Shown: one piece after another, positions 41,242-55,556 of the stretch
How positions within the stretch are numbered: position 1 is the stretch's first letter
How the letters are laid out: every line of letters starts with the position of its first letter
Assembly (NCBI GenBank): GCA_904063045.1
Contig: CAJFCJ010000010.1
Coordinates: 558,001 to 622,000, forward strand
DNA from: Dimorphilus gyrociliatus
Lineage: Eukaryota > Animalia > Annelida
DNA length: 64,000 nt
Direction of reading: 5' to 3'
The notes under the pieces: model-generated
The model's input: only the letters and a program-made list of their open reading frames with translations
Told to the model about the DNA's origin: nothing
The model's database searches: none
Position numbers and translations under genes: made by a program

Positions 41242-44200
41242 TGAAAGAGTTGCAAATGTTCTAGTTGTTTGATCATCTTCTATTATTGTGTTTAATTCAA
41301 ATAATTAATAATATATAGTTCTACGAAGAATAAAGAAATAACGAAAGAAAAGTTACTTGTTTTTACTTTATAGTATTCAATTTAAATGGGAACTATTCAA
41401 TTGAATTACTTACTAATTAATCAAGTCAAGAAGTTATTACGTGATCCATATTTTAATAGAATTTATGTTACTTTGCGCTAAAAGGCTTATAGTAGGTTGA
41501 TATAGAATTTTTATTGTATTTTATGAGTGTCTGAAGTCATTAGCATCCTTTGCAGATTTTCATAAAAATCTATTCATGAAATATAAAATGGTACGAAAAT
41601 AACGTTAATAAAAAAGCCAAAACTTGTTTAAGCAGTTTTTATTAATGTAATTGATTATTAAGTCTTGATATTTTTGTCAGTTGAAACTTTGACTAGATTT
41701 TTAAGTAAAACTTTCGCCTTTAAAAATAGATTGACTATCCTGTATAAAGATCAACTTCCGCCTATATATTACTATTTAGTTGCTGAATATTGTAGTTTAC
41801 CAGGGTGGCAGTTATTCAACATAATTTATATATTGAAGACTTGTACGTGAAATTCCTATAGTAGACGATAGAATTGCTATTTCTAGAAATTAATTAAAGC
41901 AATTGCCCTGGAAATGTTTGGAACAAAACATCCAAGTATTTCTCAGTTTGCACTATTTGTTATTTTATTGAATTTTATACCCCAGTCTCTCTTTAGTCCT
42001 GCAATAGTCACTGTATTGTTAAGGGGCAGCGGAAATGTAATTTTTTTACTAAAGGCTTCTCACCGTTTTCATTTGGTTCGTAATCGTTCAACTGTAAAAC
42101 ACAATCGGATGTTTAGAAAGACTGAAAAATAGAAAAGAAAAGCAAATAGTATTAATAAATAAGATAGAAATGGAATAAAGGAAATTGTAATTTGGTAACA
42201 TTGGCAAATGTTCCAATCTACATGTAATCAAATGACCCTCAGCGGAGGTCATGCGAAGGAAACCGATGGGACTTTTCCTAAAATTATGATTTGCTTGAAA
42301 GCCTACGGGTTATACTCGAACGGTTGATTGGTTTTCAATTGGTATGCCAAGGATCCTGTTAAACAAAATTCTATTTTTAAGCCTAATTATTTTTTTTGTA
42401 CTCCAAAATTGAATCTCTTCAATTACAATTTCTCATAATAAATATTTTAATAAGGCTTAAAATTAAAGAGATAAGCAGAAAAGGAGAAAGAGCGAGAGAG
42501 AGAAGGAAAAGAAGAGGTAAGGTGGGAGGTCTAATTTCTTCTCATTTAAGGTTTTTGTATTGTCACAAAAATAACTAAGCTATTTGTTGTTTTTTTCTAT
42601 TTCTAGAAAGCGCCTATTGATTTTGAGGACAATCGATCAAGACTATGAACTGGATTAAACTAGGAGAGAAAAGCGTTCCCTCTTTCCCAACCAAGTAACG
42701 ATTGCATCAGGCGCATAAAGCGTATAGATTATTTATAAGAAAAAGATGCACCGAGTAGAAAACTGCGACTGCGTTACTGTATAATTAAGAATTGGACAGT
42801 AGAGTAAACATAAAAGGAAAGGTTATAAGAAAGGGAAGAGAGAATGAAAGAAAGCAAAGAATAGCTGGGAAGAGAAAAGATCAATAGTGATTATTACATA
42901 GCATTCGCATAAAGACTATGGAATCGTTGCGTAATAGAATACAAAATAGGCAGCTTTTTCCCCCTATGATTTCTTGTATAAAAGTCGCATATCGTATTTT
43001 TTATATTTTTCTTTTATTCATATAGAAAAGTAATTTGATTTGTATATATGTAATTACATATACAGTATATATGCACTGAAGTAAAATACCATCTTTAATA
43101 TATATTTATTGGTAATTTTATTCGCAAGAACGAAAAAGCAGCATCCTTCTGACAAAACAAACCGTATACAGAATAACGTGAACTTGTATATATATATATA
43201 TGTAATAATAATAATAATGAATTGTTTATAGATAAAAAATACGGCATAGATATATTTAACTAAAGAAATTAGTATGATAATAATAGTAATAAATCATAGT
43301 TTTAACATATAATAATATTAATAAATATATATATATATATGTTTATATATGTGTAAAATTCTATTAAGCTAATCTTAACATATATGATATGCTGGTGGTT
43401 ACTGTATATTCATATTTTTTTAAACCATTCTTATCAGTTTTTTATTATCAATCTGAGTTTTGGTTTTTTTCCCCCATCATAGTAGTAAATAGATTAAAAT
43501 ATTAAATATATGAATTATGATTTATATATATATATATATATGCTACAATCACACCAAAACGACACACGTGACTATAAACAAATCACAGCTCGAGATATAT
43601 GTTATCAAAGTTAGATACGTAGCTTAATATAGGTTACGTTTCTTTGTTCTTTAAACATCATTATAATTCATTTATACAGTTAAAAATAATAATAAGTCAT
43701 TAAAGCTAACAACAACACACAATCAATAAATAAATAATAAGGAGGGTTATTTTGCTTTTTTAATATTCATATTTAGACTAGAAGTTTGTTAAAGGCGTAG
43801 GTGTGCGTGATATCTTTATAGGACGACGACATCGATTATTCTTATTTCCTTTTCTTTTTAAAAATTAAAATTGAGACAACCTCTAGAAAAAGAAATCCTA
43901 TAGATTTTTAGGTAAAGGTGTTACTTAATTCATTACGTTCTTTTCTTTGTTTTTTTCTTTTTTGTATAGAGAGATATAAAAGGAGTAGAAAGAGAAAAAC
44001 TAAACAGAAAGTTTACTTATCAACTATATGCCAAATTTTTTTTCTCTTGTAAAAAAATTCGTTAAGTAAAAGTAAAGAGAGAAAAAAAATACTTTTACTG
44101 CATAATTCTTATCTTGTTCTTTCTTTCTCTCTCTCAGATTAATGAATATATATTATATACTGCACCGTGAAAGTAATATGTTTTATAATGATATCTAATC

Positions 44201-44943
44201 GCCATCGCCGCCCCGCCGTGATCAATTTCCATTTTTTTCCTTAATTATAAAGAAAAAAAACGTTAGATTTGTTTTTGACAAACTTGACGCTTCCCTCTTT
44301 TTTTAGTTTTTAATATACATTAAGCATGCTGAGGACGAATGAACAAATAACTTAATGACTTTCTTTAAAAATCAACTAAATTGAAATAAATAACCGAAGA
44401 AATAGAGAAAGCAAACTACTCCATTTTTGATCATTTCAGCTTTGACATGTACAGTTAAGCCCAAAATCCTAAAACGGAACACAAAAAGTGCATCTGCAAC
44501 TAATCATAGGAGATCTTAATGAAAACTTGTATTCCTGTAAGGAGAATTTCTTTCTAACGTGTTATCTTTCTAAGCCGGAGAGAAGACATTTACAGATAAG
44601 AGATTGAGAGGAAGTTACAGATAGATTGATAGACAGTTGACAGTTAGGAGAGAGAGAGACAGCGAGAGAGAAGAGATAGATAGTAGAGATTGAGGAGTAT
44701 AGAGACAGAGAAAGGATGATGAAAGCACTCGTTCTATTTGCCGAATCGGCGTCCAAAAACTGTAAAGAAATAGTAAGTCAGATTCGATTTGACGCTAAGG
44801 TGCGTTTTTTGACTCTTGGTCGACGATTGGGTAGTGAAGAAAGTAGACGACCTGCTCATAGTCCAGATTTCGTCATCTTTCTTCGTCGATTCCAATACTT
44901 CGTCGAAATTTGCCATGATATGGGCGGAGGGCGGGCGGACTTG

Positions 44944-46978
44944 TCAGAGTTCCTTCCTCTTAATAACATAGGCGTTTGTCCATATATCAGAAAGGCAAAC
45001 AGCCGAATGGAAGCGGAAGAATATTATCATAGGTATACAAATATGAGATATTATGGACCAAGCTAAAAAGCCATAGTATTGAGTGTGAGCGGGCATTGAG
45101 TCAGCCTTTCTCGCCTCAAAAGCATTAAGAACCCATAAGCACAGGTTAACTAGTAGCAGAAAAGTAACCAAAGCTCTCCCAGGCTTCATCATTACTTGAC
45201 CATCATTAGCTGCACACCTTCTCATGCCGTCGAGTATAAAGACACTTTGTAACGCCGCCTCGACGAAAGCCAGTAACGACGATATTAGACTTAATCCCGA
45301 TAGGACGCCAAATTGGGATACAGTCGCAATCGAAGAAACAACAAGGAATATGTTGTACATGCATAAACCGGATAAACTAATAACCAAGAGAAGACTCTCA
45401 AAGCTAGCCTCTTCCAGCCCAAGAAACCTTAACTGTTGGAGTTTGAAAAAGGCAACAACGACGACACCTGCGCACAAGGACAATAAAGTCGTTTCCGTTA
45501 TGTAAAAGATGAAAGCAGCCGATTTAGCATTGTTGAGCTTTTTGTCAAAGACGAAGAAACAGCTCATAGAAATTAGGGTTAGTATCGCTATAAATAAGCC
45601 TAAGAAAAGACCCTTATTCGCTTTGTGGCATTCTGTCGGATTTGATAAACTTCTAGGATCTGTTTCAGTCTATTTTTAATTGAAAAGGAAATAATTAATG
45701 AAGTATTAAATCTGTTAAAACAAAAAAAAAACGAATCCTACCTGATGTCTCGGTCTGTGAAGCTTACCGACGCTACAATAAATTTTGTATATCATAGCCA
45801 AAGCGATTAAGCTGTATTGGGCAGTGCAGGGGAATAGGAAGGGAGCCGTATTCCTTGCCAGAGTTGTTGTCACGTAGCAGACAACATCTTCTTTAGGCGA
45901 ATCACCCGAGTTCTTAGCACCAATGCCAGCAGGTTTTGGCGTCGATGCTGACTCGACAACGTTATATTTTTGAGTTGCCTCATTATAGCGCCAATCCTCA
46001 TCCGTTTCATGTATAGTACAAAGCAACCAAACACAAAGGTTGGTTGCAGCGATATGAACAAGCCCAAATCTTGCCAAAGCTTTATGCATATTGATAACGA
46101 CCTACAAAGATATAATAAAGACTTGTAAGATAAATCATATATAAAAATAATGAAAGGCGGGGAAAAGTCGCTGACATGTCAGATGATAATGAAACGAACA
46201 AATATATATATGTATACTGTATATATATATATAATATTTAACATACAAATGTATATATATATATATTTAGTTTATGCATGTATACAGTTTATATAAGCAT
46301 ATACAGCCACGTATATGCAGTATATACTGAATATAAAAAATAATCCAATTACAGTAGCTTTATATGAGGATCATGCTTGATTTAATAAATTATAAGATTT
46401 CTTAAGTGCAACTTTGCATTATAGCTAATTCGTTAAAATATAACATATTCAATAATGTTAATAAATATTCAAGTCAAGATCCCTGTCTTAAGATTCCCTC
46501 TCTCTTTCTTTTTTTTCTATCTCTCTATCTCTCTCACTCTTCCACACACACACACACTCTCTCTCTTTCCTTCTTTCTCATCTCTCCCTTTCTGCATTTT
46601 TCTCTTAGCAATTCTCTTAAGCTCTTCATCAATTTTCACTACTATTTTCGTTTATAAGAAAAATATATTGATGAAGAATTTTTTTAAAAAAACAAAAGAA
46701 TATAAAAAAATAAATTGAAAACAAAATCACTAAAGCTAGAGAATGAAATTCAAATGAGATAAAATAAGGATAGGATAATAAAACAGAGGAGAGTGAAATA
46801 GAATTTAAGAGAAGGAAAGCGAATCTCTTTCATAATACGCATGCGCAATGACTAAGATTTGATACAATATAATTAGATATACTGTAAATAAAATACAATA
46901 TATAGCGTATTTGAATCTGAGGAAAAGTAGTAAAAGACGAAGATGGACAGAGTAGAAAAAGAAAAGAGAGAGGGACAG

Positions 46979-47018
<40 letters not shown>

Positions 47019-47632
47019 TAGATAGGAAAAGTAAATAAAAGGGCAGATGATGACCAGTTGAAGGTCCTTTTTAATTGCTCTTTAATTAAAAGAGAAACAA
47101 ATTAAGTCACATAAGCGTGAAACAAATTATACACACATGAAACTAATTCGTAGGCCCATTTCGGATACGATTGAAAGAACGAGTGGAAATAAAAAATTGA
47201 CGAATAATGTTGTTCTTTGTATGAAATGTATAAAATATAACCTACGAATTCACACATACGCACACACTTGCTTTATAGTATATACTTAAGAAAAAAAGAG
47301 GGAAGCAGGGAAAAGTGTTAAGGAAGAGAAAGTTTATCCAGAAGTAAATCAAGGGCAGTTAACGCAATTAACTAGGAGTCGCGTAATAACCTTCTGGATA
47401 AGTTTTGCGTAACCAAGCAACGACATGCACGAGTAGACTCAAGTAAAGAGCAAAATAGAACAATTTTCTTTCCTCTTTGGCCCTTTTTAATACTCATTTT
47501 CTTTATTCTATTCCATTGTAATAGTTGGAAAAGAGGAAGAAAATCCTTCTTTATTGTTTTCATCATGTTCAAAAGCCGAAAGTATAGAAGTAAATAATAT
47601 AATGATTTAGATATACTGTATATATAGTATAA

Positions 47633-47666
<34 letters not shown>

Positions 47667-50512
47667 TATTTGTAAGCTTTTAATAAAGAATATTTAAGCG
47701 CGTAATCAGATCAAAAGAAAGTCATAAAACAATAATATTCATTAATCTTGTAAAGATTTCTTTGACAAAAAGTATAAAGTCGCTATTTCTTCTAATGCAT
47801 TTTGAGAAGCGGCTTCTCTCCCCCTCGGCCCCCCGCCCCCTCCCCTGCACAAGTGTTTTCTCATCATCTATATGTGTCAAACGCAAAATATTTTTGCACT
47901 TACTTTTGACACTACTCTATTCTCTCAACCCTCTCTTTCTGTCTCATTCTGTCTGCCTGTCTGTCTCTCTCTCTAGCTGGTTTATCTTGTTCACTTTATT
48001 TCACTCTTTGTTTCCCCTTTTGCTCAACGATTTCCAGGCATTGATTTCAATAACTCTTTGATGTTTTTTCAATGCAAAGAAAGTTATGATAAGTGTATTG
48101 GGGGAAAAAATAGTATCGCGTATTATATTATAATAATATATACAGTATATCCTTTAGGCAACTAGAAAACCGATATCCAAACATTCGGGAACAGAGTGTT
48201 GATGGTAGAATAAAAATTAGGTTGCTTGTCGAATGTTTTATCTATGGTTATGCCTTGTTTCTATAATAGAGAGACTATGCAAAATTCATTTTCCAAATGA
48301 AATGGCCATTTTATATCAGTCGAGGGACTTTGAATAAAAAAAGAGAGAGAAAAAAAGCAGTATTGATTTGAAAGGAATGCATTAATCTTTGTTAATAAGG
48401 GAAATCTTACACTTAGGGAAAGAATCTTTTTAAACCCAGAAATGGTAATTTTTATTCAAAGACTAGACAAAAAAATAGCATTGAGATAAAGTATTTGGTG
48501 ATTTTCTTTTAAAATGGAAAAAAAACTGCTTCGTGTCATTCTAGAAAAAAAATGTAAAGAAAAAATTCTATTTTTCTCTTCCACACGCTCTTCCCTATTT
48601 TCCCTTTTTCCCCTCTCCCTCCATCCCTTCTCAATCTACTTCCTTCAAACTAAATATAGAATGTAGATGTAAAAAAAAGGTTTATCCTTTAATCCTTGCT
48701 AGATTTAAATATTACTGAGCACGTCTTAAAAGAACTATACGCAGATAGTCTTTTAAGGTACAGTAAAATCAATAAACAATGAATTAATATTTAATCTTTC
48801 CATCAATTCTTTTGATAGCTAATAATTATTTGGCCTCATGTAAGGTGACTTTATCTGGATTTATTAAGTGAGGCCTTAAGAAATATCTGACTATATATAG
48901 TTTGTTCCTTTTTAAAATCAAATGTAATATTTGTGACTTACTTAAACATCAGACAAGATTAATAAGAATAAGTTGTATATGACATTCTGTTGACAGGATA
49001 TATGTTGTCTATTGAATAGAATATATATCATTTATGTATATATATATATATATACTGTATATATGTGTATGCACTCCATAAACATTCGTTATGTTTATGG
49101 AAATAGTGTTATGCCTTTATAACAGGAGTAACGAAAGATAATTAATGATTTAATGAGGTTAGAAAAAAAAGCGCTTTTATGATATGTTATGTTATGAATG
49201 TTCGTATTAGCTTTATACGACAAGCGAAAATGATTGGAGTAAATATTTATACTACTCACATCATTCAAGCCCTTGTACACTGAGTAAATCTGGAAAAGTA
49301 AGAAGACGATAGACAGAAAGGCGGAGAAAACAAAAAAATAAATCTTTTTTCTGATTTCTTTTTTTTTAATAAAAAAAAGAGACTTTAATAAAATATATAT
49401 TAATAGATATATTTTGCTTTTTATCATAGCATCCCAGTTTTCAAATAGTAATAAGATATAAGGTACTTCTATTAATTATATACATTTTTAAATAATTATA
49501 TTTATATATATATATATATATATAAATTCTATATCATTCTTTTTCTACTATCATATGAATAAAAACACCCTTTTAAGCACTCATTCTTTCAATCTTTGAA
49601 GCGCCGCTAGGCCTACACAACTTCTAAAGCTTCGCAAAGATTGGCAGGAAGGTTAAAGGAGCAGTAATAATAATATAAATAATAATAATAATAATAATAA
49701 TAGTAATAAAGTAAAAGTATCAGTAATTAACAATCATCTTAATGACAAAGAAGAGAAAAAAGGAGAGATTATAGACAAAGAATAAGATGTCAATCAATTA
49801 TTTAAAAAAAGAAGAGTCTTGCTAATCAATAGAGATTCCCTTCTTCCCAACATTTAACTTCAATAGTTAAATCTACAAATGCTTCTTATGCAGAGATTGC
49901 AGTATTCTTTTACATCTCATAACAAAAGATTAGATTATAGGACTAGTTTGCATCCTCAAGGTAAAACCTAATGATAATAATTAAATAAGAAAAAGGAAAT
50001 TTAGGGAATTTCTCTAGCTGTCTGAAATCTACTCACTACATGTCCCTTGGGTAATTTTCCAACACTAATATCTTATAAAAGAAACGCATTTTCTACTTAT
50101 TAATTATCGTTGAATTAACATTTTGGGTGGAGAATACGACAAAAAACCGTCTTTGTTAATTCATTTCCTTCTTGATTTGTGTGGCAAAAGGCTAAATAAG
50201 TAAAGAGGTAGAGAAAGGGGGACGTAAAAAGGTAATAATGATAATAAAAAAATAACAAAAATGTCTATTAGTCACTTGAAAAAAAAGGAGGAGAAGAATA
50301 TTTAATAAAGACAGAAAGAAAATCATTAGGCAGCCCCCAAGACAAAGAACACAAAAGGACCTTAGAAGAACATTTAAAGTATTTAATTATCGTGCAATAG
50401 CGCGTACAAAGCTACGCTTTTAACATGAAAAATTTGTTAAATACGATTATAGGGGTAAAATTAATATAAAAAAGCCTTATAAGAACAAATGATGCCTTAA
50501 ATAAATAAGGAT

Positions 50513-50577
<65 letters not shown>

Positions 50578-52077
50578 TATATGTTAACGTTTCTCACATA
50601 TAAGATATAGATATATAAACATAAAAATAACTATGTGGTTGTATGGTAGCGAATGTGTATCTCTGTGTTCTACGTCCGTCATAAACAGGGATAAAGCTTA
50701 AGGAGCAAAATAATTGTACTGACCTTGTGGCTTTTAAATAAGAAGAAGGTCTGGAAAAACGTAAAGAGGAGATGGGTAACCGCAACGAGAATGTAAAGTG
50801 CTCCGTAGCAGTGTATTGTTGCTCCCGATTCGAATACAGACGCTATCTTAAAACCGTCGTGAATCATGGAGCCGGCGCTAAAAGCGATCGAGCCGATCCT
50901 CAAATAAAAATTGACGCCTTCGGCCTCGTAGGAAACTAGAGCTGACGGCTGATAGACGTCTAATTCCAAATCACTAGGCGTCCTCGATCGGCTTTGATGT
51001 CCGTCGCCTTCCTTCGGTAGATCTTCACCAGCGGCTACATCTCTCATCGAATGCATGCTCGAATACGTTTTATCAGCATCCAAACGGTTATTGCTAACCA
51101 AACGTATGTTCCTCACTCGAGATTCCTCTCTTCTATGACGAAGGACATAGGTGTGAAGATAGACTAAGAAAGCTATAGCCATTAAGTAGATGTAGAGGTG
51201 AAATATTTCCACATAGTAAGATTGGTCCCCACTCTTTCGGGTTAGAGCATCCGTTATGGGGAAAACTAGGCCTAAAACGACCACCAATAGGGCGTATATA
51301 CCGCATAATAAGTGGGTGATTGCCGATCTGCATATTTAAAATATCGGATTAGAATAGTTTTTTATGTTCAAATAGAGTAAAAAATTTTCATTCTACCAAT
51401 ATACTGCAACGTTTTAATTGCATTCCTTCGCCCTTTTTACGGCCTAATAAACTCGATCGAACTTATGCACGCGTGATGGACAAAAAAGAGAGAAAAAGCG
51501 GTGTGAATGAGGGATTGGAAAGGATGGGAAAAAATGTCAAAGCCATGTTGTTTTTTTAATTTTTATTTTAAAACTATGATAGACTTTTTCGCGCATTGCA
51601 GAATAAAATTTCCCACAGTAACTGACCGCTGGCGTTACAATCCATACTATTACGGGCGTCACCCAATACTATCTTACTTACATGTGCTCGAAAATAATAT
51701 TTATGGAAGAGAATATTAGACTATGTTCGTTTCCTTCGTAAAAAGAAATTCTTAGACGATCAGTTGCGATGCCGTTCAGAATAAATCTCTTTGCAAATTG
51801 CTGTCACGCAATTTTCCTACTTAATTGGCGGCAAAGTAAAATAGTATCTAAAACCCTAAAATGTAATTGTAGTCAATGGTGGCGCACCCCTTTTATTCTT
51901 CCATTTACTGTGCACTCCCTAATTATCCGATTTGGAAGAATTTAGAAATATAGAGCGTTCAGGAAACTAATAGACAGAATCGGAGCAAATATATATATGC
52001 AAATTAAATTAAATAAAAAGTATATAAGTATATATCTATAGACGATGAATAATTGAAAATCATATATATATATATAT

Positions 52078-52115
<38 letters not shown>

Positions 52116-52309
52116 TTCACAGCTTACTCGACTGCCAAGATCTTTTCCGAGACGGCAGAGGCGATAGACGCCGCAATGTTTTGTTGTTGTGTTGAATCCA
52201 AACGTGTTGTTTCATCAGTTGTCGCTGCGGTAACGTCGTCGGACGCTCCGACTACGCGAACATTATGCCACTTATTCCGAATAGTAGAGAGCATTTGGAC
52301 GACGGTCAT
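44944..52309 (-). CDS. OTOP: Otopetrin-family proton channel (isoform using the proximal N-terminal exon)
   Basis: Exons 52309-52128, 51327-50724, 46101-45742, 45669-44944 join in frame. GIYALLVVVLG TM1, NFYLRIG, FTFFQTFFLFK, ARFGLVHIAATNLCVW, PFLFPCTAQYSL, CHKANKGLFLG, KPGRALVTFLLLVNL, PMIIFFRFHSAVCLSDIW. Confidence 0.93.
46975..47025. repeat. (GAAA)n/(GA)n simple repeat
   Basis: Direct reading. Confidence 0.85.
50515..50582. repeat. Long (TA)n microsatellite ending in TA-CAG-TA
   Basis: Direct reading. Confidence 0.9.
52067..52113. repeat. (TA)n microsatellite next to the otopetrin exon donor
   Basis: Direct reading. Confidence 0.9.
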
Positions 52310-53353
52310 CTATATATCCAAAAAAATGCTCGGGGAAGCGTCTAGCGAGAAAGTAATCAGCGTCGAGGCGCTCGGCAATAATGCATTCCGGCCGCGAGGA
52401 CGCCTCGCATAATGCGCGGCAGCGCCGGCGTCTATCGGTAGCGTCACCGGTGTTGCGCTCTGATAAAAATACGGCCGCCTATCGAGGCGTCTCTACCGAT
52501 TTGCAAACGGTTAGATAAGCGTTGACTAAAGAAAAACAAACTTTTCTGTTTTTACGGGTGTAATTTCTAATTATCATAAAAGAATGTCGCGAGAGAATTT
52601 TACGCTCGAAGGAATCTGACAAACCGAGTGACGGCCCGATGTTCGTTACCAACGTCTCCATGGTAACCAAAAAAATCAGGCGAAGACGCTCTTGTTTGCA
52701 GACCGAGAAAGATTAAACGGCGCGAAAAGAAAAACTTATATAAGATTCCCTCTACCGCAATCCTCTTTAAGAATTACCCGCTTAAGACTTTGTGTAGAAT
52801 GCCTGTTTTCCATTAGGAAAAACGGTGCGGATGTTTGAAGTTTGAGCGGGTTTTTGTTTTCGTCTAAGGAATAAAAGGGACCGATTCTCCTTTTTCTATT
52901 ACTAACGTCTCTCTGATATTGCTATATATGGAAAAAAAACTCAACGGACAAGCTAAAAGGCAGCACTTGTTTTTTAGAGAGAAGCGTATATTTGTATATT
53001 TTATATATAGTGCATATAGGCTTAGCTTTACTTCTAGTAAAATCAACCTCTTAATCGGTAAACCTATTATTTCAATTAATCAAGTTTCACTTGGATGTTT
53101 TCAAATTTCTATGGTTTACCACTGACATATAATGGAATTAGGCCTTTTAAAATTCAAACCAAACTAATTCACCTCAAGGTATCTCCTACTTTCTCTAAGC
53201 TTCCAAGCAATTTTCATCTTGGGCCTACTTATAGACTTATTGTTTACCTCTAAACGTCTCCGATGACGTCAAATAAAATATGTAAAATTCACTCGACGTA
53301 AAATGTCAACTAAACGGAAGTTGTTTAGCGATAATACAGGCGCCTGTCTTTAC

Positions 53354-53385
53354 CTGACTAGTCTGTCACAATTAGTCGGCTGCAT
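53354..53385 (-). CDS. Candidate short alternative first coding exon of otopetrin (MQPTNCDRLVR)
   Basis: ATG followed by 10 codons plus 2 nt, then a strong donor TCAG|gtaaag. Phase 2. Confidence 0.4.
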
Positions 53386-54443
53386 CACCGAGACTTTACA
53401 GAGCACTTTCCATCGTAAAGCATCTAAATCGTCTAATGCGTAGAGAAATAGCTATTCTATGTATTTACGCGGTTTTCCTTATATAAACATACCGTAGAGT
53501 TTGCAGATATTGTCCCATGTACAGGCAGTCACAAAATCTGATTTATAGATATAACATACAACACCATATCCATATAAAGATGCTGTTTTTTTCAAGCCCT
53601 AACTCCTTCTCTTTTCTCACTTTATGCTTGTTCTCTCTATTATATTCATGAGCGATTGCTCTGCTTCGTTTGTTCCGCAATGGTTCACCGGGGAACTGAT
53701 TTGTTTTGCTTTAGTGCTTTTTAGACGCCCTACCGAGGAGACCTAAACCATATATAGAAGAAAACTGTGAGTCCAATTAGCGAGGCGGAAAATTAGAGTG
53801 AGATGAAAGAATCAGATATTAGAATTTGGTGCCATCATTCTCTTAAATTCTCTTCACGATACGTAATATATCCCCAATGAACGTATACTATACTAAATTT
53901 TATGGTGAATGAGAATGACACCCGGCGAAAACGCCCCTTAATGGACGTTGTTGACGGGAAAATCTTGAAAAGCTCAGCTTTCTATGACGTCACCGGGCTG
54001 ATCTGATTAGTCCTGACACTCGGTATTTTTTCAGCCTCCAACTTAACGAGTAGAATCTAGAAAGAGACGCCGCACCTGTTTCAATATATACTACGCGTAT
54101 TCGTGACGCGACAGAGCTTTTAGGCACAGAATTAAATCAGTCATCTCACTTGACGGATTTCTCTCATAATTGTATATACCCTACGTTTATGGAAGGGAAG
54201 CAGGGAAGGAAAAGGAATGATCACATGACCAGTTGCAGGGAATTTAAGTGACAGACGGCGCGACAAACGGTCAGTAATTGGTAGACGGGTGCTGTTTTAA
54301 TAATGTGAAATTGCACGAACCTGAATGCTTCTAATTCTTCTCTGCTTAGAGGAAAGGAAAACGAAAAGAGATGGAAAAAAATGCATTAGAACTAATTTCA
54401 GATCTGGAAATGTGAATAATTTATAAAAAAAAGCGTATCTTAC

Positions 54444-54566
54444 CTAAACGCCGAAGCTTTTTCCGGATCGTCCATGGATTGGTCAATAGCTACACCGAAG
54501 CAGCTTAAACCGAACGCTTGATGGGCTTCAATAACGGGATTTTTATCGCTCTGATCTCGCATTTTG
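54444..54566 (-). CDS. Alternative upstream otopetrin coding exon (123 nt, phase 2-2; ATG at 54562)
   Basis: Acceptor ttgcag|, strong donor TTTAG|gtaaga. Open frame MRDQSDKNPVIEAHQAFGLSCFGVAIDQSMDDPEKASAFR. Phase matches the 51327 exon. Confidence 0.6.
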
Positions 54567-54846
54567 CTGCAAACCGCATAATTTATCAGTCCACAAAAAA
54601 CAACAGAAGTAAACTATATACTTTATATCCATAAAAGCATATATATATACAGTATATATATACATATATGTCTATAAATACATGTAATATATACATGCAT
54701 ATGTTTAGTAATTTGATAAGCCAAAATAAAGCATTGTTTTAAAGCATAAAAAAATACATATCTAAAAAAAATGTCTGAAAATTTAACAATATCGAGTAAT
54801 TGTTGATGATACGTTAATTACTACGTTTATTAACTATAACCTCATT

Positions 54847-54878
<32 letters not shown>

Positions 54879-55412
54879 CTGTATATATACATATATATAC
54901 ATATACAAAGTAATACAATTTTTCTCTCTCTCTGTCGCTCTCTCTCTCTTCCCCCTATCATATAAAATCTATATAACTTATTTTTCCCATTCATACATCA
55001 AAGATAATAACAGTAGTTATGATCTTTGAAAACTTTTATGGAAAAACACTTTATATGATGAATTTATATGTAGATTGTTTGCTTTTTAAATTCTTCCCAT
55101 TAGCCGTCCCTTTCTCGTTTCTCTATCTATCCGTCTATCTCTTCCTCTCTGTTTTCTCATACTTTTCTAACTTTTTTAACTATTACCACGTGACTAGAAA
55201 AATTAAAATAACAATTTCAACGACATTAAACTTAATAATAAGCCGGAAAATTATAAAACGAAAAATAAACTCTATCCATAACGAGTTTTTGCAAGTTTTC
55301 TAATACTCTGTTTGTTTGTTTATTTGTTTTTTCCCCTGTTTAAAGCATTATGTACAACAAAACCTTACATGATGCAGAGGGCGAATCTAGACAGGGTTCA
55401 TGCCACGCTCAC

Positions 55413-55556
55413 CGTTCTTGAAGCAGATTGTGCAGGTTCTCGTCGTCCTTATGAACTTCGGCACCAGTATGCATAGCAGCAGCTGCTTGACCCGTAGCTA
55501 CCGGGAAAAGTCTGGATCTCAGTTGTATCGCTTTGCGGAACATATCTTGCCATAGG
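55413..55556 (-). CDS. Alternative upstream otopetrin coding exon (144 nt, phase 2-2)
   Basis: Acceptor tacag|, donor CG|gtgagc. Open frame LWQDMFRKAIQLRSRLFPVATGQAAAAMHTGAEVHKDDENLHNLLQER. Phase matches the 51327 exon. Confidence 0.7.

What the first reader, a model, noticed from the sequence alone, without database searches (positions are those of the whole stretch)
44734..44946. Candidate stop-codon readthrough extending the otopetrin C-terminus by about 70 aa
Seen: the otopetrin CDS ends GAA CTC TGA CAA GTC. The same frame then stays open for 69 more sense codons (QVRPPSAHIMANFDEVLESTKKDDEIWTMSRSSTFFTTQSSTKSQKTHLSVKSNLTYYFFTVFGRRFGK) up to TAG at 44734. This stretch is GC-richer and more protein-like than the flanking UTR. 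Established: UGA followed by C is the leakiest eukaryotic stop context, and programmed readthrough is common in invertebrate neural genes. Inference: a fraction of channels carry a Ser/Thr-rich cytoplasmic tail. I saw no SECIS-like element, so readthrough is more likely than selenocysteine. An acceptor-like CTGAC..TTTCTTTACAG near 44760 allows 3' splicing as an alternative explanation.
Basis: partly seen in the sequence, partly recalled or inferred. Interest (0 to 1): 0.75.

Follow-up and report, generated by a model that had tools for sequence, protein, structure and literature searches.

The report
Conserved read-past tail on worm otopetrin
In the tiny marine worm Dimorphilus gyrociliatus, the 69 codons after the stop signal of an otopetrin proton-channel gene evolve like protein in the channel's own reading frame, so some ribosomes most likely read past the leaky stop and make a longer channel.

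Summary
The minus-strand otopetrin gene (100% identical to Dimorphilus gyrociliatus DgyrCDS8062) stops at TGA 44946-44944. Sixty-nine in-frame sense codons follow, up to TAG 44736-44734.

I used two diverged relatives from public read assemblies: L018, a spliced mRNA, and L019/L020, genomic contigs.
- TGA-C and TAG are conserved, and there is no indel in the 207 nt.
- 14 of 16 variable sites lie at codon position 3 (P = 1.2e-5).
- dN/dS is 0.04-0.08. The other five frames have dN/dS above 1 or contain stops.
- Right after the TAG, substitutions are spread evenly over the three positions and indels are not multiples of three.
- The relative's mRNA runs unspliced through the region.
- Rfam finds no SECIS element.

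More distant orthologues end at the same ...KRKEL position but have no similar tail. The canonical stop is therefore ancestral and the tail is specific to the Dimorphilus clade.

Stop-codon readthrough is the best reading (about 0.65). The main rival is a separate 60-codon downstream ORF that starts at a conserved, well-placed ATG at codon 10 (about 0.17). This is a new member of a known kind.

The scan has also noted readthrough candidates in three other genes of this genome (AMD1, ABHD17, KLHL5), but not at this locus.

The parts
44947..45671 (-). Coding part of the last otopetrin exon (acceptor AG at 45673-45672), ending ...IKRKEL
   Evidence: Pfam PF03189 E = 2e-55. It is 100% identical to DgyrCDS8062. 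The exon boundary comes from the relative's mRNA L018 and the GT-AG intron 45741-45672.
44944..44946 (-). First stop: UGA followed by C (UGA-C)
   Evidence: It is conserved in L018, L019 and L020. Orthologues at 50-65% identity stop at the same protein position.
44737..44943 (-). In-frame extension of 69 codons that evolves as protein in frame 0
   Evidence: There is no gap in 207 columns. 14 of 16 variable sites are at codon position 3 (P = 1.2e-5) and 12 are synonymous. NG86 dN/dS is 0.04-0.08, with Fisher P between 1.6e-7 and 1.4e-3.
44917..44943 (-). Nine codons between the UGA and the first in-frame ATG, C-rich and nearly invariant
   Evidence: 26 of 27 nt are identical in three lineages. 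The single change is a synonymous CAT/CAC at codon 8.
44914..44916 (-). Conserved in-frame ATG (codon 10) with A at -3 and G at +4; the possible start of a 60-codon downstream ORF
44734..44736 (-). Second stop: UAG followed by A
   Evidence: Conserved in all lineages. Past it, substitutions lose their three-base periodicity ([14, 8, 8]) and indels of 1, 2, 4, 11 and 14 nt appear.
44708..44796 (-). Block with one variable site in 89 nt across the three lineages: the invariant last 20 codons of the extension and TAG, plus 26 nt (one G/A change at 44730). It contains the acceptor-like CTGAC...TTTCTTTACAG (44781-44760).
   Evidence: P(no wobble change in 20 codons) is about 3e-4. This points to an extra constraint at the nucleotide level, of unknown nature.
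44182..44733 (-). Rest of the 3'UTR, as covered by the relative's mRNA
   Evidence: L018 positions 1284-2786 align to window 45671-44182 in one block. The proximal part is 91% identical to L019, against 63-69% for introns.

Best explanation
A fraction of the ribosomes that translate this D. gyrociliatus otopetrin mRNA decode the UGA at 44946-44944 with a near-cognate tRNA and continue in frame for 69 codons to the UAG at 44736-44734. The product is a proton channel whose short cytosolic tail after TM12 (...IKRKEL) is lengthened by about 70 residues.

Shown:
- The 69 codons are under purifying selection at the protein level, in the frame of the channel.
- The UGA-C and the second stop are conserved.
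- In a relative, the region lies in the mature mRNA, contiguous with the CDS.

Inferred:
- The translation arises by readthrough rather than by a fresh start at the ATG of codon 10.
- The tail has a predicted acidic helix, a Ser/Thr-rich linker and a predicted aromatic/basic helix, and it changes regulation or trafficking of the channel.

The lower synonymous rate in the extension, and the nearly invariant 89-nt block at its 3' end, point to a second, RNA-level constraint of unknown nature.
For: - Anatomy.
- Relatives: L018 (Logan SRR31837514) and L019/L020 (SRR23372229/8) are orthologues at 85-87% nucleotide identity.
- Extension: it aligns without gaps, with TGA-C and TAG conserved. Variable sites by codon position are [1, 1, 14], binomial P = 1.2e-5, and 12 are synonymous. 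dN/dS is 0.079, 0.037 and 0.083, with Fisher P of 7e-5, 1.6e-7 and 1.4e-3.
- Controls: the CDS tail gives [2, 0, 19]. The stretch after the TAG gives [14, 8, 8] with indels that are not multiples of three.
- Other frames: they have dN/dS above 1 or contain stops, including the open plus-strand ORF 44716-45066.
- Conservation: the extension is the most conserved segment of the locus, at 93% identity against 63-69% for introns.
- mRNA: L018 is a spliced mRNA. It aligns in five blocks and lacks the GT-AG intron. It is unspliced from the last exon through the TAG and for about 550 nt beyond.
- Selenocysteine: no SECIS at E <= 10.
- Copy number: the sequence is single-copy in the genome.
- Known hallmarks of readthrough are all present: a UGA stop, C at +4, raised GC, a long 3'UTR, a probably disordered extension and a conserved second stop (PMC13278127; PMC5100048).
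- Operons: D. gyrociliatus has no operons or trans-splicing (PMC7854359), which weakens a dicistronic reading.
Against: - There is no direct evidence of translation: no ribosome profiling, no peptides, no reporter.
[quoted passage not shown] Only one substitution, a synonymous one, falls in the nine codons before it, so coding immediately after the stop is not demonstrated. Under the rules of Jungreis et al. (PMC5100048) this is a borderline case between readthrough and dicistronic.
- Abundant readthrough has not been seen outside Pancrustacea (PMC5100048).
- No conserved RNA structure is supported: z = -0.96, no compensatory changes, and several predicted pairs are broken.
- Only three lineages were available.
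- The tail has no detectable counterpart in orthologues at 50-65% identity.
Confidence: 0.65

Rival explanations
1. A separate downstream ORF. The conserved peptide is a 60-residue product that starts at the ATG at 44916-44914. It would be made by reinitiation after the otopetrin stop 27 nt upstream, by internal entry, or from a short transcript that starts inside the last exon. On this reading, being in frame with otopetrin is a coincidence.
For: - The ATG is conserved in all lineages, with A at -3 and G at +4.
- All but one of the informative substitutions lie downstream of it, in codons 16-49.
- The 27-nt spacer is almost invariant, as a cis element would be.
- The criteria of Jungreis et al. 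treat a conserved in-frame ATG as grounds for calling a case dicistronic when the stretch before it does not score as coding (PMC5100048).
Against: - Frame 0 with no intervening stop has only about a 1-in-5 chance under this model.
- UGA-C, the leakiest context, would be a second coincidence.
- The one substitution before the ATG is a synonymous wobble change.
- Reinitiation after a 655-codon ORF is inefficient (general knowledge).
- This species has no operons or trans-splicing (PMC7854359).
- No gene caller or public annotation has this ORF as a protein.
Confidence: 0.17
2. Another route past the stop. Options are an alternative splice that removes the UGA, use of the acceptor-like site at 44760, A-to-I editing of UGA to UGG, or selenocysteine insertion.
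For: - A well-formed branch point, pyrimidine tract and AG lie at 44781-44760, inside a nearly invariant block.
- Editing at a low level cannot be seen in an assembled contig.
Against: - The relative's mRNA is unspliced across the whole region and reads TGA.
- The coding signal (codons 8-49) lies upstream of the 44760 acceptor.
- No usable acceptor lies between the UGA and codon 8. The only AG there follows a purine-rich stretch.
- There is no SECIS at E <= 10 in the window, L018 or L019.
Confidence: 0.08
3. Not translated. On this reading it is a conserved 3'UTR element whose open frame and substitution pattern arise by chance, or the decaying remnant of a longer ancestral C-terminus.
For: - The whole proximal 3'UTR is strongly conserved: 91% identity against 63-69% for introns.
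- The open frame alone has P of only about 0.02-0.06.
- Synonymous divergence in the extension is about a third of that in the CDS.
Against: - The three-base periodicity (14 of 16 variable sites at position 3, P = 1.2e-5) and the absence of indels have no non-coding explanation. Both stop exactly at the TAG.
- Orthologues across a wide range end at the same ...KRKEL position, so the stop is ancestral and not a recent truncation.
Confidence: 0.05

Closest known systems
Functional (programmed) stop-codon readthrough of cellular genes, as catalogued in Drosophila and Anopheles (Jungreis et al. 2011, cited from memory, and 2016, PMC5100048; 2026 preprint PMC13278127)
   Same: - A UGA-C first stop that is conserved.
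- A protein-coding substitution pattern in frame 0 up to a conserved second stop.
- Raised GC, a long 3'UTR and a probably disordered Ser/Thr-rich tail.
- A higher dN/dS in the extension than in the main ORF.
   Different: - The host is an annelid, outside the Pancrustacea, where abundant readthrough was reported.
- The gene is an otopetrin, for which I found no report of readthrough.
- A conserved in-frame ATG sits at codon 10.
- No supported RNA structure was found.
- Synonymous sites are themselves unusually conserved.
Dicistronic transcripts and translated downstream ORFs in animal mRNAs
   Same: A conserved ATG in a good context lies shortly after the main stop, followed by a conserved short ORF.
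   Different: - The ORF is in frame 0 with no stop between it and the main stop.
- The main stop is of the leakiest type.
- The species lacks operons and trans-splicing (PMC7854359).
[quoted passage not shown] 2014, as listed in the references of PMC5100048)
   Same: A short UGA context yields a minor isoform with a different C-terminal signal.
   Different: In those cases the extension adds a targeting signal. Here the idea, which is untested, is that the extension would bury a terminal K-x-K-x-x pattern. No targeting motif was recognised in the tail.
Selenoprotein UGA recoding
   Same: An in-frame UGA followed by conserved coding sequence.
   Different: No SECIS element is present in the 3'UTR of the window or of the relatives, and the site is not in a redox motif.

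Membership tests
Otopetrin proton channels (Pfam PF03189) | Significant match to the family profile through the C-terminal transmembrane half | tested here: met
   Last exon E = 2.2e-55, profile positions 229-434 of 434. Previous exon E = 9.5e-18. 1,234 homologues at E <= 1e-3.
Functional stop-codon readthrough (non-selenocysteine) | Open in-frame second ORF with a protein-coding substitution pattern specific to frame 0 | tested here: met
   dN/dS 0.04-0.08 in frame 0. All other frames have dN/dS above 1 or contain stops. 14 of 16 variable sites are at position 3.
Functional stop-codon readthrough (non-selenocysteine) | The coding signal starts directly after the first stop, not at an internal ATG or splice acceptor | tested here: inconclusive
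   Codons 1-9 carry a single, synonymous change. An acceptor is excluded, but the ATG at codon 10 is not.
Functional stop-codon readthrough (non-selenocysteine) | Conserved first stop in a leaky context | tested here: met
   UGA-C in all four assemblies. The context hallmark comes from PMC13278127.
Functional stop-codon readthrough (non-selenocysteine) | The second ORF lies in the mature mRNA, contiguous with the first | tested here: met
   Shown for a relative only: the spliced mRNA contig L018.
Functional stop-codon readthrough (non-selenocysteine) | Direct evidence that ribosomes pass the stop (footprints, junction peptide, reporter) | not testable with these tools
   No ribosome profiling or proteomics data could be reached.
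Selenoprotein | SECIS element in the 3'UTR | tested here: not met
   No SECIS family at E <= 10 in window 43000-45200, L018 or L019.
Dicistronic / downstream-ORF peptide | Conserved start codon, with a coding signal that begins at it and is absent upstream | tested here: inconclusive
   The ATG is conserved with a good context. The upstream 27 nt are too invariant to score.
C-terminal dilysine (KKxx / KxKxx) COPI retrieval signal | Lysines at -3 and -4 or -5 from the extreme cytosolic C-terminus | tested here: met
   Met as a pattern only. The canonical end K-R-K-E-L fits KxKxx. The pattern occurs in 35 of 124 otopetrin tails, against 8.7 in shuffled tails. Function was not tested, and no paper links it to otopetrins.

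The most novel reading that the evidence does not exclude
Readthrough acts as a trafficking switch. The canonical channel ends in a K-x-K-x-x pattern that fits a COPI retrieval signal, and such a signal works only at the extreme C-terminus. Reading past the UGA would bury it and add a 70-residue tail, so only the extended isoform would leave the early secretory pathway and reach its site of action. The nearly invariant RNA block at the end of the extension would set how often this happens.
Probability: 0.1. Interest if true: 0.8.

Novelty: new member of a known kind. Interest (0 to 1): 0.55.

Why it matters
- No paper in the searched library links otopetrin to stop-codon readthrough, so this may be the first evolutionary evidence for a recoded, C-terminally extended otopetrin proton channel.
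- It is one of few well-supported cases of conserved translation past a stop outside insects, crustaceans and vertebrates. With three other candidates noted in this genome, it suggests annelids deserve a systematic readthrough survey.
- It gives a precise, testable handle on how a proton channel with an otherwise fixed, very short C-terminus could be regulated or sorted.
- It shows that the public gene model needs a second product, or a second ORF.

Tried and rejected
- Searches for the extension peptide all came back empty. Pfam found no family. The own genome holds no second copy. The 5.8-billion-protein search found no candidate. The ESM Atlas gave no usable hit. Two JGI metagenome pattern scans found nothing.
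- The C-terminal tails of 189 fetched otopetrin homologues gave no significant match to the extension.
- The in-frame stretches after the stop in orthologues at 50-65% identity (L026, L028-L034) show no significant similarity (P = 0.17-0.95). A PPS[A/T]H match in L026 is noted but not significant.
- Selenocysteine is rejected, because no SECIS is present.
- The plus-strand ORF 44716-45066 is rejected, because its dN/dS is above 3.
- A conserved readthrough-stimulating RNA structure is not supported.
- I suspected that L018 might be a chimeric assembly. This is rejected, because exon 3 is equally conserved in all lineages.
- AlphaFold2 on the single peptide gave a low-confidence model (pLDDT 60.7) with two helices. 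I used it only as a hint.
The exons were searched separately by reference, and the relative's 655-residue protein P0153 was used for the full-length search.

Full report
**What is there**

The minus strand of the window carries the last exon of an otopetrin gene. Pfam PF03189 matches window 44947-45630 at E = 2.2e-55, up to the last profile position. The 228 residues are 100% identical to the C-terminal part of DgyrCDS8062 (CAD5119455.1) of the annelid Dimorphilus gyrociliatus, and that protein ends at the same stop. The assembly has 77.9 Mb in 349 contigs.

GC is 0.46 in the stretch, against 0.33-0.38 just downstream and 0.2-0.3 beyond.

As an open frame alone it is only mildly unusual. P is 0.025-0.059 in shuffles, and 1.7% of all stop-to-stop intervals in the window are this long or longer.

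**Relatives**

The cluster of DgyrCDS8062 contains proteins called on read-assembly contigs, and I fetched those contigs.
- L018 (Logan SRR31837514, 3,009 nt) has a 655-codon ORF.
- L019 and L020 (SRR23372229 and SRR23372228) are genomic contigs.
- They are 85-87% identical to the window over the last exon plus 650 nt downstream.
- The window genome has a single copy of this sequence, so these are orthologues from other lineages of the Dimorphilus complex.
- They are well diverged. Synonymous divergence in the last exon is 0.76-0.98 from the window and 0.48 between the two relatives. Introns are only 63-69% identical.

**The comparative test**

Across the 207 nt of the extension the three lineages align without a single gap. 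TGA-C and TAG are conserved. Sixteen columns vary: 14 at codon position 3 of the otopetrin frame (binomial P = 1.2e-5), and 12 of those 14 are synonymous. The protein changes are Q39H, K43R and L49F.

| Pair | dN/dS (Nei-Gojobori) | Fisher P |
|---|---|---|
| window vs L018 | 0.079 | 7e-5 |
| window vs L019 | 0.037 | 1.6e-7 |
| L018 vs L019 | 0.083 | 1.4e-3 |

Of the other five frames, most give dN/dS above 1. The only one with a low ratio shares the wobble position and contains stops. The fully open plus-strand ORF 44716-45066 has dN/dS above 3.

The controls behave as expected. The CDS tail gives [2, 0, 19] by codon position. The 234 nt after the TAG give [14, 8, 8], with indels of 1, 2, 4, 11 and 14 nt.

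The pattern therefore starts within the extension and ends at the second stop. This is the signature of translation in frame 0 that has been maintained in all lineages since they split.

**Transcript evidence**

L018 aligns to the window in five blocks: 55556-55413, 54567-54438, 51333-50721, 46103-45742 and 45671-44182. It lacks precisely the GT...AG intron 45741-45672, so it is a spliced mRNA. Its last block runs uninterrupted through the TGA, the extension, the TAG and about 550 nt more.

In that relative, at least, the extension is part of the mature mRNA. It is contiguous with the CDS, reads TGA, and is not spliced at the acceptor-like site.

**Alternatives**

- *Selenocysteine.* Rfam lists no SECIS family even at E <= 10 in window 43000-45200, L018 or L019.
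- *Splicing.* The acceptor-like CTGAC...TTTCTTTACAG (44781-44760) lies at codon 62, downstream of all the informative substitutions, so it cannot explain them. No plausible acceptor lies between the UGA and codon 8.
- *Recent truncation.* Orthologues at 50-65% identity end at the same position, many with the same ...IKRKEL end, so the stop is ancestral. What follows their stops differs:
  - L030: TGA-C and 33 open codons.
  - L031: TAA-C and 40 open codons.
  - L032-L034: TAA TGA.
  - L029: TAG and 12 open codons.
  - L026: TAA and 99 open codons.
  - None of these is significantly similar to the Dimorphilus tail, so the tail is specific to that clade.
- *Downstream ORF.* This is the one rival I cannot dismiss. 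Codon 10 is a fully conserved ATG with A at -3 and G at +4 (44916-44914). The nine codons before it carry only one change, a synonymous CAT/CAC. Under the rules of Jungreis et al. (PMC5100048) that makes the case borderline between readthrough and dicistronic.

Five points favour readthrough over the downstream ORF:
- Frame 0 with no intervening stop has about a 1-in-5 chance under the rival.
- The stop is UGA-C, the leakiest context and a hallmark of readthrough genes (PMC13278127).
- The one pre-ATG substitution is a wobble change.
- Reinitiation after a 655-codon ORF is inefficient (general knowledge).
- The species has no operons or trans-splicing (PMC7854359).

Two points go the other way. 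Abundant readthrough has not been found outside Pancrustacea (PMC5100048), and nothing here shows translation directly.

My estimates are readthrough 0.65, downstream ORF 0.17, other recoding or splicing 0.08, and not translated 0.05. The remaining 0.05 is left unassigned.

**Further features**

- The extension is the most conserved stretch of the locus: 93% identity to L019, against 88% for the last-exon CDS and 91% for the proximal UTR.
- Its synonymous divergence (0.24-0.33 from the window) is about a third of that of the CDS.
- Its last 20 codons are invariant, and the 26 nt after the TAG carry a single G/A change (P of about 3e-4 for the codons). An RNA-level constraint is therefore layered on the coding one.
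- I could not say what that constraint is. RNAalifold finds no covariation, several predicted pairs are broken, and the fold is no better than shuffles (z = -0.96).
- dN/dS in the extension is about ten times that of the channel core (0.006-0.008). [quoted passage not shown]
- A single-sequence AlphaFold2 model has low confidence (pLDDT 60.7). It suggests two helices (residues 7-29 and 54-67) around a Ser/Thr-rich linker.

**A hypothesis for function (inference only)**

Otopetrin tails after TM12 have a nearly fixed length of 9-12 residues. They end in KKxx or KxKxx in 35 of 124 fetched homologues, against 8.7 in shuffled tails. These sequences are related, so this is not an independent count.

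The window protein ends K-R-K-E-L. Such dilysine signals work only at the extreme C-terminus (general knowledge of COPI sorting). No paper links them to otopetrins. Readthrough would bury this end.

**Literature and novelty**

No paper in the library combines otopetrin with stop-codon readthrough, or D. gyrociliatus with readthrough. The held supplements of Jungreis et al. 2016 do not name an otopetrin.

The scan's own notes list readthrough candidates in three other genes of this genome: AMD1, ABHD17 and KLHL5. These are unchecked leads. I did not test them and do not count them as support.

I class the finding as a new member of a known kind.

**Limits**

- Only three lineages were available.
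- The window's exons were not joined into a spliced protein. They were searched one by one, by reference.
- No protein read through the stop was submitted to any search.

Noticed in passing
L026:3949-3990 (ENA ERZ26052449 ctg75718), compared with window 44934-44920: A distant orthologue (about 50% identity, stop TAA) has 99 open in-frame codons after its stop. They begin ..APPSTH, and 13 of 15 nt are identical to the PPSAH codons of the window, one codon further from the stop. The peptide similarity is not significant (P = 0.17), and the rest of the stretch looks non-coding.
   Followed up: partly
window 44708-44796 (-): Block with one variable site in 89 nt across three lineages whose synonymous sites are otherwise near saturation. 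It spans the end of the extension, the TAG and 26 nt of UTR. It holds a textbook branch point, pyrimidine tract and AG (44781-44760) and a 4-bp GCCG/CGGC hairpin. Its function is unknown, and the relative's mRNA is not spliced there.
   Followed up: partly
window 44500-44733 (-): The proximal 3'UTR has long blocks conserved at 91% identity (introns 63-69%), separated by a CT-rich stretch full of indels. These are probably dense regulatory sites.
   Followed up: no
window 50721-51333 (-): Exon 3 of the same gene is 93-94% identical among all three lineages, while exons 4 and 5 are 86-88% identical. Synonymous sites of exon 3 are therefore unusually constrained.
   Followed up: partly
window 46104-55556 (-): The public model DgyrCDS8062 (381 aa) starts inside what the relative's mRNA treats as an intron (50720-46104). 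That mRNA encodes 655 residues from exons at 55556-55413, 54567-54438 and 51333-50721, so the public model is probably truncated at its N-terminus. Two of these exons lie in the interval of the scan's note s1-082398.
   Followed up: partly
G000: C19:490003, C2:4209711, C9:1350236, C2:904615, C14:2225195, C23:309115: Six further otopetrin loci are present in the genome (24-33% identity to this last exon). Two of the matches contain in-frame stops, which could mean introns or pseudogenes.
   Followed up: no
window 44945-44956 with 44721-44731 (-): RNAalifold pairs the 12 nt around the first stop with the stretch just after the second stop. This gives about 10 bp closing the whole extension. There is no covariation and the fold is not better than shuffles.
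   Followed up: partly
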